DNA of 64,000 nt from NCBI RefSeq assembly GCF_006345805.1, contig NC_043005.1, positions 12,896,001 through 12,960,000 on the forward strand. Reading direction: 5' to 3'. The notes below the pieces were generated by a model. That model did not search any database and was not told where the DNA came from. It was given only the letters and a program-made list of their open reading frames with translations. This document shows, piece after piece, positions 56,460-63,926 of this stretch. Position 1 is the stretch's first letter. Every line of letters starts with the position of its first letter. Made by a program: the position numbers and the translations under genes. The stretch is from Octopus sinensis. Its lineage: Eukaryota.

Positions 56460-59400
56460 CTACTGAGGTTTCTTCATTGAATGATGAACCTCGATACTTG
56501 TTATCTGGCACGGCCCTTTCCTTACTGGTGGGACACACATAGTGGCCGGTAAGCATCGTGTCTTGAACCCTGAATTTCCAGTACTTGCAGAAGCAGCGAC
56601 CTGTTGATTGCAAAAATGACATCCTTTTAGTCTGTTGGGGACGACTCGTGGCCTAGTAAGGCCACCTTGATGCCTGATGTGGTAATGTTGTTTGTTGTCA
56701 TGGCACACGTGCTTGCTGGTGTGACATACACATTGGCTGTTGTTCCTCTCTTGTGAGCTGAGGCCCACCTGTCGACAGCTGGCACACTCTTGTTGCCCAG
56801 TACGGAAGATCTGCTCTTTGGGGTGGCTCCTATACTGGATACAATGTTCTTTTGTGTAGAAATCCGGTGGGGACGTAAGTGTCCTTTGTTTGGTAAAGGG
56901 GTTTTGCATTAGATCGGAGAAGGCCATCTCTTGCTTAACGAGACTATTTCGTTGGCTAGAGAGGCTCTGTTGATGGCTGGTGAGGCTCCGTTGATGATTG
57001 ATAAGGTTCTGATATTCGTTACTATGGTCCGCTTGTTGACTGAAGTTACTTAGTTGGTTGGTAAAGCATTTGTTTGATTTGGTGATGTTTATTTGATGGT
57101 TCACATGTCGGTTGCAGGGGATGACTCGGTATATGGGACGACTTTCTTGCTGACAAACTGAGCATCGTTTTTGACTCGTGAAATGACCCTGTTGATTTCT
57201 GAGGCTCGCCTGCTGAGTACCTATATTCATTCGTATCTTAGGTATATCCGCACATTGACAAATAGGTTTCATTCGTTTGTTGATGGGGTTCACCTTTTGA
57301 ATGGTTATATGCCTTTGTTCACTGAGAATGGCTCCATCTTGATTGGCAAGGTCTTCTTGGCTGGTACTCCTGCTCTCTTCTAGACTGGCAGCGCTTCCTT
57401 TTTCACTACTGAGGCTACTTTCTGAACGGCTGGGGCTTTTCTCTTTATTCTGATTGGTGAATATAGCTTGTTGACAGATGTGTCGGGCTTGATCGTCGAT
57501 GTAGATTGCTTGGCTGTTTAAGCATCTTTCTTGACTGACGGGTCTGGCTTGCTGATGTGCACTGTATAAGCATCCATCTTCAATGGTGTGGGTCTCTTGA
57601 TGAACGGGAATAGTCTCTTTTTGACTAGTGATTCTCTCTCGTTGAATTATCCCGTATCCTTCATGAATAGTGAAGCTCTCTCCTTGTTGACTAGTGATGC
57701 ACACCCCTGGTTGACTACTGATGCTCTCTCGCGGATATTTGAGGATTCCTTGACTAGAGATGATTTCTCGTTCACTGTCGACGTCTCCTTGATAAGTAAT
57801 ACTCTCTCGTTGACTTTTGACGGCTTCGTTTTGAGTACTGATGCCCTCTCGTTGAATTTTTACGTATCCTTCTTGCTGACTGATGACGTCTCCTTGACTA
57901 GTGGCAATATCTCGTTGTATTTTAATGCTTCTTTGTTGACAATTGATGCACTCTCGTGGACTGTCAACGTCTCTTTCACTAGTGATGTTCTTCCAGTAAC
58001 TGTCAATGCCTCTTTCGTGACTAGGAATGCCCTCTCGTGGACGTTTGACGTCACCTTTTTCACCAATGATGTCCTCTCGTTGACTGTCAACGTCTAATTG
58101 TTGACCAGTGACACTCTCTCGAGGACTCTCGACGGTTTCTTGTTGACTTGTGATGCTCTTTCGTTGACTTTTGACGACACCCTCTTCACCAATGATGCAT
58201 TCTCGTTGACTATCAGCATCTAATTGTTCATTAGTCACTCGAGGACTGTCGATGATTCCTTGTTGACCTGTGATGCTCCCTCGTTTACTGTCGATGCGTC
58301 CTTCTTGACCAGTGATGCTCTCTGGTTCACGTTTGACGTCACCTTCTTCACCAATGATGCCCACTCGTTGACTGTCGACGTCTAAGTGTTGACTAGTGAT
58401 GCTCTTCCGAGGACTGTCGACGATTCCTTGCTGACTTTTGATGCTCCCTCGTTTACTGTCGATGCGTCCTTCTAGATTAGTGATGTCCTCTCGAGGACTG
58501 ACGACGATTCCTTGCTGACTTGTGATGCTCCCTCGTTTACTGTCGATGCGTCCTTCTTGACTAGGAATGCTCTCTCGTTGAGGTTTGACGTCACCTTCTT
58601 CACCAATGATGCCCTCTCGTTGACTGTCGACGTCTAATTGTTGACTAGTGATGTCCTCTCGAGGACTGTCGACGATTCCTTGTTGACTTGTGATGCTCCC
58701 TCGTTTACTGTCGATGCGTCCTTCTTGACTAGGAATGCTCTCTCTTGGACGTTTGACGTCACCTTCTTCACCAATGATGCCCTCTCGTTGACTGTCGACG
58801 TCTAATTGTTGACTAGTGATGTCCTCTCGAGGACTGTCGACGATTCCTTGTTGACTTGTGATGCTCCCTCGTTTACTGTCGGTGCGTCCTTCTTGACTAG
58901 GAATGCTCTCTCTTGGACGTTTGACGTCACCTTCTTCACCAATGATGCCCTCTCGTTGACTGTCGACGTCTAATTGTTGACTAGTGATGTCCTCTCGAGG
59001 ACTGTCGACGATTGCTTGTTGACTTGTGATGCTCCCTCGTTTACTGTCGATGCGCCCTTCTTGACTAGTAATGCTCTCTCGTGGACGTTTGACGTCACCT
59101 TCTTCACCAATGATGCCCTCTCGTTGACTGTCGACGTCTAATTGTTGACTAGTGATGTCCTCTCGAGGACTGTCGACGATTCCTTGTTGACTTGTGATGC
59201 TCCCTCGTTTACTGTCGATGCGTCCTTCTTGACTAGGAATGCTCTCTCGTGGACGTTTGACTTCACCGTCTTCACTAATGATGCCCTCTCGTTGACTGTC
59301 AACGTCTAATTGTTGACCAGTGGCACTCTCTCGAGGACTGTCGACGGTTTCTTGTTGACTAGTGATGCTCTTTCGTTGACTTTTGACGACACTTTCTTCA

Positions 59401-63926: not shown

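What the first reader, a model, noticed from the sequence alone, without database searches (positions are those of the whole stretch)
56460..63926. 7.4-kb stop-free exon encoding an unrecognised multi-phosphosite tandem-repeat protein
Seen: ~2,490 codons without a stop or frameshift although the units have diverged widely (IDSKRGSITSQQGI, VDSPREDITSQQLD, VESRRESIPSQHAE), and length variants stay multiples of 3. It ends in a unique ~450-aa Q/H/C-rich tail, a stop and a nearby AATAAA. Known: S/T-Q is the ATM/ATR motif, SP-R a proline-directed (CDK/MAPK-type) motif, and K/R-R-x-S a PKA-type motif. Most units carry one or more of these. Inference: a translated, intrinsically disordered scaffold whose charge can be switched in bulk by phosphorylation, possibly lineage-specific or germline/structural. 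I recognise no family.
Basis: partly seen in the sequence, partly recalled or inferred. Interest (0 to 1): 0.85.

Follow-up and report, generated by a model that had tools for sequence, protein, structure and literature searches.

The report
Giant repeat-built coding exon, orphan
A 7.5-kb stretch on the minus strand is a tandem repeat of 14-amino-acid units that has been kept free of stop codons and frameshifts by selection, so it very probably encodes part of a long, unstructured, lineage-restricted protein, but nothing shows that its many kinase-type motifs are used.

Summary
On the minus strand, window 63926 to 56463 is 2,488 codons without a stop, then TAG (56462-56460) and AATAAA 95 nt downstream. 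About 140 units of 14 aa (42 bp; consensus VDSQRESITSQQGD, itself two heptads h-x-S-Q-x-x-x) are arranged in higher-order repeats.

Openness is not chance. At least 335 substitutions separate the 85 distinct units. About 14 should have made stops and none did (P about 1e-6), while two control frames behave neutrally. All length variants are multiples of 3. The 383-codon tail has 0 stops against 19 expected.

- Amino-acid change is otherwise neutral (syn:nonsyn 57:168, omega about 1). The serine of the S-Q motif is the residue most often replaced.
- The "unique" tail is decayed repeat, not a separate domain.
- The array runs past the window edge, where two 86-nt copies break the frame.

No homologue, Pfam domain or confident fold was found, but the databases seem to lack this organism.

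Best reading: the 3' coding part of a taxon-restricted, repetitive, low-complexity protein gene in which only frame and rough composition matter. The phospho-switch idea is untested. This is a new member of a known kind, of modest interest.

The parts
63828..64000 (-). Two 86-nt higher-order copies at the window edge. They match the 84-nt copies downstream except for an AG insertion (GGCGAGAGAAAGC against GGCGAGAAAGC). They shift the frame and produce the in-frame TAG at 63929-63927. The array continues beyond the window.
63324..63926 (-). ORF codons 1-201. Young, nearly identical 84-nt (28-aa) higher-order repeat VESRRESIPSQHAE-IDSKRESVASQKVD, about 7 copies.
61938..63323 (-). ORF codons 202-663. 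Diverged 14-aa units, including a roughly 203-aa block present twice, 12-aa variant units (VDSPRVTDEQLD) and a 23-aa variant (INRRRGSNASPQIFVEGPSKEGD). The first in-frame ATG is at 62795-62793 (codon 378, context GGAATGG).
60762..61937 (-). ORF codons 664-1055. 28-aa higher-order repeat IDSKRGSNTGQQEI-AVSPRGSTTSQEGR, 14 copies.
60006..60761 (-). ORF codons 1056-1307. Diverged single 14-aa units.
58050..60005 (-). ORF codons 1308-1959. 56-aa and 124-aa higher-order repeats (VKRPRESIPSQEGR-IDSKRGSITSQQGI-VDSPREDITSQQLD-VDSQREGIIGEEGD). TRF reports a 372-bp period, 2.7 copies, 94% matches at 59111-60125.
57612..58049 (-). ORF codons 1960-2105. Degenerate units of 8-16 aa that the unit profile still recognises. 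All length changes are in frame.
56463..57611 (-). ORF codons 2106-2488, the "tail". Basic (pI 9.3) and rich in Q, S, N, H and C. It has 0 stops against 19 expected. It keeps a 7/14-residue Q periodicity and DNA similarity to the unit, so it is decayed repeat. It contains three CxxC and two CxC motifs; a fourth CxxC lies in the degenerate units upstream.
56460..56462 (-). TAG stop codon that ends the open frame.
56360..56365 (-). AATAAA hexamer 95 nt downstream of the stop, a candidate polyadenylation signal. A (CATA)n microsatellite and a SINE-like element follow.

Best explanation
Window 56460-63926 (minus strand) is the 3' coding part, probably the terminal exon, of a taxon-restricted gene whose visible coding sequence is built entirely from one minisatellite. 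A 21-nt heptad unit (h-x-S-Q-x-x-x) became a 42-nt, 14-aa unit. That unit was amplified into 84-, 168-, 372- and roughly 609-nt higher-order repeats, presumably by unequal crossing-over or replication slippage. The copies are young and homogenised at the 5' side and old and decayed at the 3' side.

Shown: selection has acted almost only on translatability. Stops and frame-breaking indels are removed, while amino-acid replacements accumulate at the neutral rate.

Inferred: the product is a very long (at least 2,488 aa), hydrophilic, non-globular chain. It has an acidic polyampholyte body (pI 5.0; S 16%, Q 11%, E 10%, I 10%, R 9.5%, G 9%) and a basic Cys/His-rich end (pI 9.3). Its function would depend on bulk properties, namely length, charge, hydration and multivalency, and not on a defined fold or on individual motifs. 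This matches the repetitive low-complexity domain proteins that dominate lineage-specific genes in molluscs.

Possible but untested: multisite phosphorylation at about 195 candidate S/T acceptors. Whether the protein is nuclear or secreted cannot be decided, because the N-terminus lies outside the window.
For: 1. Stop exclusion in the array. The sense frame has 0 stops in 1,998 array codons. Two other frames that are open in the consensus have 43 and 24 stops. A minimum spanning tree over the 85 distinct 42-nt units needs at least 335 substitutions, and 4.2% of possible substitutions would create a stop. That gives 13.9 expected and 0 seen (Poisson P about 9e-7). The two control frames give 19.3 expected against 25 seen, and 7.9 against 14.

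2. One-step codon variants. Of the codons one step away from the major codons, 96 of 212 non-stop variants occur somewhere in the array, but 0 of 9 stop variants do (Fisher P=0.0056). Five of those nine are transitions.

3. Frame conservation at DNA level. The anchor is in one phase at 109 of 113 sites, and the spacings in the main phase (18, 21, 24, 39, 57, 60, 63, 66, 69 nt and so on) are multiples of 3.

4. The oldest part is also open. The tail has 383 codons and 0 stops against 19.0 expected from shuffles (P=5e-9). The other frames have 13-45 stops, and base composition differs by codon position (chi-square P=5e-8).

5. Constraint reaches upstream of the first ATG. There are 92 private substitutions there, 4.1 stops expected and 0 seen (P=0.017).

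6. Amino-acid change is neutral. Syn:nonsyn is 57:168 against a 25.7% synonymous expectation, so omega is about 1.0. Aromatic, hydrophobic and Cys variants are not depleted.

7. No confident fold. AF2 mean pLDDT is 30.4 for 17 units with 5 paralogous rows and 35.2 for the tail.

8. A stop followed by AATAAA 95 nt downstream.

9. The kind is known. Molluscan lineage-specific proteins with repetitive low-complexity domains evolve rapidly, expand and contract, and mostly lack similarity to known proteins (PMC5400390).
Against: - No transcript, peptide or orthologue could be examined, so current expression is not shown.
- Omega of about 1 is also what a dead gene shows. Only the missing stops argue otherwise, and much of the array is young copies that carry little information.
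- At the window edge the array carries two +2 frameshifts. So either part of the array is non-coding, or the assembly is wrong there, or the gene is starting to decay.
- The first ATG is 377 codons into the frame, and no start, signal peptide or upstream exon is visible.
- The absence of homologues is weak evidence. A transposon ORF from the same window found its only close match (97%) in a sewage metagenome and otherwise matched at 70% or less. This suggests the source organism and its relatives are missing from the protein collections.
Confidence: 0.7

Rival explanations
1. The product is an intracellular, probably nuclear, disordered scaffold whose charge is switched in bulk by ATM/ATR-type (S/T-Q), proline-directed (SPR) and basophilic (K/R-R-x-S) kinases.
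For: - Motif density is very high: 109 S/T-Q in 2,105 aa (5.2 per 100 aa), 38 SPR and 48 [RK][RK]x[ST]. Of 138 units, 124 carry at least one.
- There are about 195 distinct candidate acceptors. Full occupancy would move net charge from -69 to about -459.
- Ten K-[KR]-x-[KR] matches, seven of them KRPR, fit the classical monopartite nuclear-import pattern. That pattern is from established knowledge and was not tested here.
- No confident fold.
Against: - The motifs are simply properties of one repeated consensus, so their number is not independent evidence.
- The acceptor serine of S-Q is the most often replaced residue (1 syn: 23 nonsyn; Gly in 29 of 122 units), and no site departs from neutral change.
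- There is no kinase-docking, FHA, BRCT or other domain in the visible part.
- Localisation is unknown, because the N-terminus is outside the window.
Confidence: 0.15
2. The product is a secreted structural or matrix protein, such as mucus, adhesive, egg-coat or mineral-associated material. The repeat would be a hydrated spacer, modified in the secretory pathway (O-glycosylation, Golgi-kinase phosphorylation or transglutaminase cross-linking through Gln and Lys). The Cys-rich end would form disulfide cross-links.
For: - Lineage-specific secreted proteins with repetitive low-complexity domains are the commonest class of novel genes described in molluscs (PMC5400390).
- A giant single repeat exon is the layout of gel-forming mucins and insect glue or silk genes (established knowledge).
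- The tail has 20 Cys in 383 aa while the array has 0.6% Cys.
- Q is 10.6% and K 4.5%. The array has 39 S-x-E sites.
Against: - S+T+P is only 25.6%, below mucin-type content.
- There are no VWD, C8, TIL, CTCK or SEA domains, nor any other Pfam match.
- The array has few N-glycosylation sequons (7).
- No signal peptide can be seen, because the N-terminus lies off the window.
Confidence: 0.25
3. The stretch is a formerly coding array that is no longer functional, a young pseudogene or unexpressed copy. The frame was shaped by past selection and simply has not yet decayed.
For: - Omega is about 1.
- Two frame-breaking 86-nt copies sit at the 5' edge of the visible array.
- There is no ATG in the first 377 codons.
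- The surroundings are dense with LINE and SINE fragments and microsatellites, with no other gene.
Against: - If constraint had been lost for long, stops should have arisen at the same rate as the 335 or more other substitutions, yet none is present even in the oldest part.
- The two frameshifted copies otherwise match their neighbours and differ by a dinucleotide-run length. That is a typical assembly or read error and also a typical recent slip.
Confidence: 0.15
4. The stretch is a non-coding minisatellite whose period happens to be a multiple of 3 and whose consensus happens to lack stops in one frame.
For: - A 42-bp unit that is open in one frame stays open when amplified.
- Large parts of the array are near-identical young copies.
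- Two other frames also give ORFs of 417 and 517 aa.
- Third codon positions are not more variable than first or second positions (0.28 against 0.35 and 0.32).
Against: - Expected against observed stops: 13.9 against 0 in this frame, while the other two consensus-open frames accumulate stops as expected.
- 0 of 9 stop variants occur against 96 of 212 other variants.
- The tail has 0 stops against 19 expected.
- All in-phase indels are multiples of 3 over 7.4 kb.
Confidence: 0.04

Closest known systems
Molluscan lineage-specific proteins with repetitive low-complexity domains (RLCDs; e.g. shematrins and KRMPs as described in PMC5400390)
   Same: Tandem low-complexity repeats make up most or all of the protein. 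There is no similarity to known proteins. Evolution is rapid, with expansion, contraction and rearrangement. The chains are predicted to be disordered. The whole visible ORF here, including the tail, derives from the repeat.
   Different: The described RLCDs are mostly Gly- or Ala-rich, secreted by the mantle and short. This one is S/Q/E/I/R/G-rich and at least 2,488 aa long. The source organism is probably an octopod with no external shell, a call made from memory only. Secretion is unknown.
Coding minisatellites (VNTRs) in single giant exons: gel-forming and membrane mucins, involucrin, insect glue and Balbiani-ring genes
   Same: The period is a multiple of 3. There is higher-order repeat structure, with homogenised young copies next to decayed old ones. 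The frame is kept while the repeat sequence drifts. Several kilobases lie in one open frame.
   Different: S+T+P is 25.6%, not mucin-like. No flanking Cys-knot, VWD or SEA domains are present. The Q-rich decapeptide of involucrin is unrelated in sequence. No homology was detected to any of these.
SQ/TQ cluster domains (SCDs) of DNA-damage-response proteins
   Same: The density criterion, at least 3 S/T-Q within 100 residues, is exceeded throughout the array at 5.2 per 100 aa.
   Different: An SCD is a motif-density definition, not a homologous family. Here the S of S-Q is not conserved. No FHA, BRCT or kinase domain accompanies it in the visible part. ATM/ATR phosphorylation is untested.
Phospho-regulated repeat tails: RNA polymerase II CTD heptads and neurofilament-H or squid NF220 KSP repeats
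   Same: A heptad-based repeat carries Ser, Thr and Pro with kinase-type motifs in a long unstructured C-terminal region.
   Different: The consensus is different. No polymerase or intermediate-filament rod domain is in view. There is no sequence match. The resemblance is recalled, not tested.

Membership tests
Protein-coding tandem repeat (coding minisatellite) | Repeat period and all length variants are multiples of 3 nt | tested here: met
   The period is 42 bp. The anchor is in one phase at 109 of 113 sites, and the in-phase spacings are multiples of 3. The only frame-breaking variants are the two 86-nt copies at 63828-63999, outside the ORF.
Protein-coding tandem repeat (coding minisatellite) | Stop codons are depleted in one frame relative to neutral expectation | tested here: met
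   0 stops against 13.9 expected in the array, with control frames neutral. 0 of 9 stop variants against 96 of 212 other variants. 0 against 19.0 expected in the tail.
Protein-coding tandem repeat (coding minisatellite) | Transcribed and translated | not testable with these tools
   No RNA or peptide data were available. No identical or similar predicted protein is on record.
Purifying selection on the amino-acid sequence (conserved protein domain) | Excess of synonymous over non-synonymous change | tested here: not met
   Syn:nonsyn is 57:168, 25.3% synonymous against 25.7% expected, binomial P=0.94. Third positions are not the most variable.
SQ/TQ cluster domain | At least 3 S/T-Q within 100 residues | tested here: met
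   109 S/T-Q in 2,105 aa, or 5.2 per 100 aa.
SQ/TQ cluster domain | The sites are phosphorylated by ATM/ATR/DNA-PK and sit in a checkpoint or repair protein | not testable with these tools
   No accompanying domain is present in the visible part. The S of S-Q is poorly conserved.
Mucin-type PTS repeat domain | Very high Ser+Thr+Pro content | tested here: not met
   S+T+P is 25.6%.
Mucin-type PTS repeat domain | Flanking VWD, C8, TIL, CTCK or SEA domains and a signal peptide | tested here: inconclusive
   Pfam finds none on the C-terminal side. The N-terminal side lies outside the window.
Coiled coil (heptad a/d) | Hydrophobic residues at both a and d positions, and helix-compatible sequence | tested here: not met
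   There is only one aliphatic residue per heptad (positions 1 and 8). Position 4 is P, K or Q, with Pro in 44 of 122 units. AF2 predicts no helices in the repeats.
Beta-roll or beta-solenoid repeats (e.g. Pfam LbR_Ice_bind, 14-15-residue coils) | A profile match above the curated cut-off, or a confident solenoid model | tested here: not met
   PF21300 scores 14.9 bits against a cut-off of 30. AF2 mean pLDDT is 30.4.
Zinc-finger or RING-type domain in the tail | A profile or structure match to a Cys/His zinc-binding domain | tested here: not met
   Pfam gives no hit at E<=1. The best PDB sequence hit is the RNF38 RING at E=0.15. AF2 pLDDT is 50 or lower for every 10-residue block. Only bare CxxC and CxC motifs are present.

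The most novel reading that the evidence does not exclude
The whole visible coding sequence, right up to its stop codon, was born from the expansion of a single 21-nt repeat. It is held under an "anything but a stop" regime: omega is about 1, about 45% of all one-step non-stop codon variants are already present, and no stop variant is. If the gene is expressed, it would be a very clean natural example of a giant protein selected for length and translatability alone. It might be the densest known array of S/T-Q, SPR and KRxS sites, acting as a bulk phospho-switch in a cephalopod-specific tissue.
Probability: 0.15. Interest if true: 0.6.

Novelty: new member of a known kind. Interest (0 to 1): 0.35.

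Why it matters
If it is expressed, this is one of the longest single-frame repeat proteins in its genome and has no recognisable relatives.

It also shows a clean separation of two kinds of constraint. Stops and frameshifts are strictly excluded, while amino-acid replacement is neutral. That makes it a useful case for asking how repeat-born, taxon-restricted proteins arise and what selection sees in disordered repeats: length and composition, or motifs.

For genome annotation, it marks a locus that repeat masking would probably hide.

It does not by itself open a long-standing question. Giant coding minisatellites and lineage-specific low-complexity proteins are well known, especially in molluscs.

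Tried and rejected
- Pfam on three pieces of the ORF gave only sub-threshold or spurious low-complexity hits. Bac_rhamnosid_C nominally passed on whole-protein score, but no matched stretch passed on its own.
- A search of 5.8 billion proteins with the tail found nothing.
- The same search with 800 aa of repeats found one phage tail-fibre-like protein with an unrelated 14-aa repeat, at 23% identity. I rejected it as compositional.
- A full HMMER scan of 1.84 billion representatives with the tail found two hits, both to other low-complexity repeats (LQADNVTSQQE and LTLQRDP arrays). I rejected both.
- Exact-product look-ups of the 2,111-aa ATG-initiated ORF and of a LINE ORF were not on record.
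- A metagenome scan with the tail protein and one with the commonest 22-mer of the array found nothing.
- PDB sequence searches found nothing better than E=0.15 (RING of RNF38) and E=0.015 (phage needle coiled coil).
- I did not run Foldseek, because both AF2 models were far below usable confidence.
- Rfam found no family anywhere in the window.
- Literature searches for four peptide strings and for the SINE core sequence gave no papers.
- Organism identification failed. The nearest relative of a window LINE ORF is a 97% match on a contig from an Italian sewage metagenome.
- I tested for conservation of particular unit positions (S3, R5, S7, Q11) beyond neutrality. The result was not significant (Fisher P=0.17).
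- I tested for depletion of aromatic and hydrophobic replacements and found none (P=0.70).
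Full report
**1. What is there**

The open frame lies on the minus strand. Translation from the window end downwards meets a TAG at 63929-63927. It then runs for 2,488 sense codons (63926 to 56463) to a TAG at 56462-56460. ORF listing from the first ATG (62795) gives 2,111 aa.

Tandem Repeats Finder reports a 42-bp period over 57933-64000: 144.9 copies, 63% matches, 3% indels. It also reports 21-bp sub-periods and a 372-bp higher-order period.

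A profile built from clean units finds about 140 units of 14 aa with consensus V-D-S-Q-R-E-S-I-T-S-Q-Q-G-D. The unit is itself two heptads, h-x-S-Q-x-x-x.

The array is organised in blocks:
- a young 28-aa higher-order repeat at the 5' side (63324-63926);
- diverged units with a duplicated block of about 203 aa (61938-63323);
- fourteen copies of a second 28-aa higher-order repeat (60762-61937);
- diverged units (60006-60761);
- 56- and 124-aa higher-order repeats (58050-60005);
- degenerate units of 8-16 aa (57612-58049);
- a 383-aa tail (56463-57611).

AATAAA lies 95 nt after the stop, followed by a microsatellite and a SINE-like element.

**2. Is the open frame more than chance?**

A 42-bp unit that is open in one frame stays open when copied, so I looked only at independent mutational events.

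- The 122 full-length units comprise 85 distinct DNA sequences. A minimum spanning tree over them needs at least 335 substitutions.
- 4.2% of possible substitutions in this frame create a stop. That gives 13.9 expected and none observed (P about 9e-7).
- Two other frames are open in the consensus and serve as controls. They give 19.3 expected against 25 stops seen, and 7.9 against 14. They behave neutrally.

A second test does not depend on the tree. Take all codons one step away from the major codon(s) at each of the 14 sites. Of these, 96 of 212 non-stop variants occur somewhere in the array, but 0 of 9 stop variants do. Five of those nine are transitions (Fisher P=0.0056).

The frame is also conserved at DNA level. 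The anchor AGTCA[AG] sits in one phase at 109 of 113 sites, and the in-phase spacings are multiples of 3. Two of the four off-phase anchors are in the frame-broken copies at the window edge and two are stray matches.

The most diverged and presumably oldest part, the tail, has 0 stops in 383 codons. Shuffles give 19.0 expected (P=5e-9), and the other five frames have 13-45 stops. Base composition also differs by codon position (P=5e-8).

I conclude that selection against stops and frameshifts has acted over the whole ORF. A non-coding satellite that is open by chance is very unlikely.

**3. What kind of constraint?**

Apart from stops there is none that I could detect.

- On the spanning tree, single-difference codons split 57 synonymous to 168 non-synonymous. 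That is 25.3% synonymous against 25.7% expected under neutrality, so omega is about 1.0.
- Third codon positions are not the most variable.
- Aromatic, large hydrophobic and Cys replacements appear as often as polar or charged ones (41% against 43-50% of possible variants).
- No unit position departs significantly from neutrality.

It is the most frequently replaced residue (1 synonymous: 23 non-synonymous events; Gly in 29 of 122 units). Arg5 (114 of 122), Ser3 (103 of 122) and Gln11 (97 of 122) are the commonest residues. So the data show selection for a translatable frame, and at most for rough composition, not for particular motifs.

**4. The tail is not a separate domain**

- Gln positions in the tail show autocorrelation peaks at lags 7, 14, 21 and 28. 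The permutation test gives P<5e-5 for the whole tail and P=0.0026 for the last 200 aa.
- A DNA profile of two tandem units still finds several matches in the tail DNA, the best at E=4.6e-6 and E=4.6e-4.

The visible coding sequence, up to its stop codon, is therefore one repeat family. It is homogenised at the 5' side and decayed at the 3' side.

The tail has drifted to a basic composition (pI 9.3) rich in Q, N, H and C, with three CxxC and two CxC motifs. No zinc-finger or other domain is recognised in it.

**5. The 5' boundary**

The array continues to the window end. Its two outermost visible higher-order copies (63999-63914 and 63913-63828) are 86 nt, not 84 nt, because a GAGA run is one AG longer. 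Otherwise they are identical to their neighbours. This insertion, not a splice site, closes the frame at 63927. The 73 nt visible upstream of that stop are purine-rich array sequence without a pyrimidine tract.

Three readings remain: an assembly or read error, a real recent slip, or a non-coding part of the array.

The first ATG is codon 378 (context GGAATGG). The region upstream of it carries 92 private substitutions and no stop, against 4.1 expected (P=0.017). This mildly favours translation that starts further upstream, so the gene is incomplete in this window.

**6. Comparison with known sequences and structures**

- Pfam finds no credible family. All hits are sub-threshold or have no passing stretch.
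- Two word-indexed searches of 5.8 billion proteins and a full HMMER pass over 1.84 billion representatives with the tail found only other low-complexity repeats. I inspected and rejected these.
- PDB sequence searches and two metagenome scans found nothing.
- AlphaFold2 gives mean pLDDT 30.4 for 17 units aligned with five paralogous segments, and 35.2 for the tail. With such shallow input this fits disorder but cannot prove it.

A caveat on "no homologues". A LINE ORF from the same window found only one close relative, 97% identical, on a contig from an Italian sewage metagenome. All other matches were 70% or less, from shrimp, cnidarians and echinoderms. The source organism and its near relatives therefore seem to be absent from the collections. 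Conservation within its own clade remains untested.

The window itself is repeat-rich animal DNA, with LINE reverse-transcriptase fragments, a SINE-like element and many microsatellites. I recognise the SINE as octopod from memory only.

**7. Most likely nature and mechanism**

I read this as the 3' coding part, probably the terminal exon, of a taxon-restricted gene for a very long, hydrophilic, non-globular repeat protein.

- Shown: unit anatomy, higher-order structure, exclusion of stops and frameshifts, neutral amino-acid drift, decayed-repeat tail, no recognisable domain.
- Inferred: growth by unequal exchange or slippage of 21-, 42- and 84-nt units; function through bulk properties (length, polyampholyte charge with net -69 in the array, hydration, multivalency); a polyadenylated end at AATAAA.

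This is the pattern described for repetitive low-complexity domain proteins. These are the most common feature of lineage-specific secreted genes in molluscs, evolve rapidly and mostly lack similarity to anything known (PMC5400390). It is also the pattern of coding minisatellites in mucin, involucrin and insect glue genes (established knowledge).

Whether the protein is nuclear and phospho-regulated or secreted cannot be decided without the N-terminus.
- For the nuclear, phospho-regulated reading: 5.2 S/T-Q per 100 aa, 38 SPR, 48 [RK][RK]x[ST] and 10 K-[KR]-x-[KR] nuclear-import-like motifs.
- For the secreted reading: a Cys-rich end, Q and K content, and 39 S-x-E sites.

My estimates are:
- coding under frame-only selection: about 0.7;
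- within that, secreted or matrix: about 0.25;
- within that, bulk phospho-switch scaffold: about 0.15;
- recently dead gene: about 0.15;
- non-coding satellite: about 0.04.

**8. Verdict**

The coding, disordered and unrecognised-family parts hold. The phospho-switch is untested, and motif conservation gives it no support.

It is a new member of a known kind and of modest interest. The most interesting aspect is the clean "anything but a stop" regime in a frame of at least 7.4 kb that was built entirely from one short repeat.

Noticed in passing
window 63828-64000 (minus strand): Two 86-nt higher-order repeat copies match the 84-nt copies next to them except for an extra AG in a GAGA run, which breaks the reading frame. 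They could be an assembly or read error, a recent slip, or the start of a non-coding part of the array that continues off the window.
   Followed up: partly
window 60474-62027 (+) and 60767-62020 (-): Secondary ORFs of 517 and 417 aa lie in two other frames of the array. They exist because the repeat consensus is open in those frames too, but over the whole array those frames carry 24 and 43 stops at roughly the neutral rate.
   Followed up: yes
window 52170-54241 (+): Four abutting ORFs together form a frame-broken LINE reverse transcriptase (Pfam RVT_1, E=1.6e-19 in the third piece).
   Followed up: partly
window 26282-27693 (+) and 46991-47413 (+): These are 3' parts of another non-LTR retrotransposon, with a weak zf-RVT match. 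The 318-aa ORF is 97% identical over 66% of its length to a protein on a contig from an Italian sewage metagenome (ERZ22666216). All other matches are 70% or less, to proteins of shrimp, cnidarians and echinoderms. This is a hint that the source species is eaten by people and is missing from the protein collections.
   Followed up: partly
window 5353-5377, 21117-21141, 43431-43455, 55849-55873 (all minus): A SINE-like dispersed element has the core GGTGCCACGCAGTGGGACTGAACCC in four copies, against 0 expected by chance. One copy lies just downstream of the ORF's putative 3' end. I recall this element from octopus genomes, but that was not tested.
   Followed up: partly
window 6232-6856 (-), tandem repeat 6371-6601: A 69-nt (23-aa) tandem repeat of about 3.4 copies lies inside two overlapping ORFs rich in A, R and E. 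It has a sub-threshold Pfam match to STPRs, the 23-aa "score and three amino acid peptide repeats" family (E=3.9e-5, 24.4 bits against a cut-off of 27).
   Followed up: no
window 44094-44446: A 107-108-nt tandem repeat of about 3.3 copies at 76-77% identity, of unknown nature, lies next to long (ATAC)n and (ACT)n tracts.
   Followed up: no
window 169-1252 (+), 13729-15665 (both strands), 22298-23984 (-): These are further degraded reverse-transcriptase fragments (RVT_1 E=3e-4 and 3e-8). The rest of the window shows only transposon debris and (CATA)n, (AT)n, (ATA)n and (TGA)n microsatellites, with no other convincing gene. Rfam found no RNA family in the window.
   Followed up: partly
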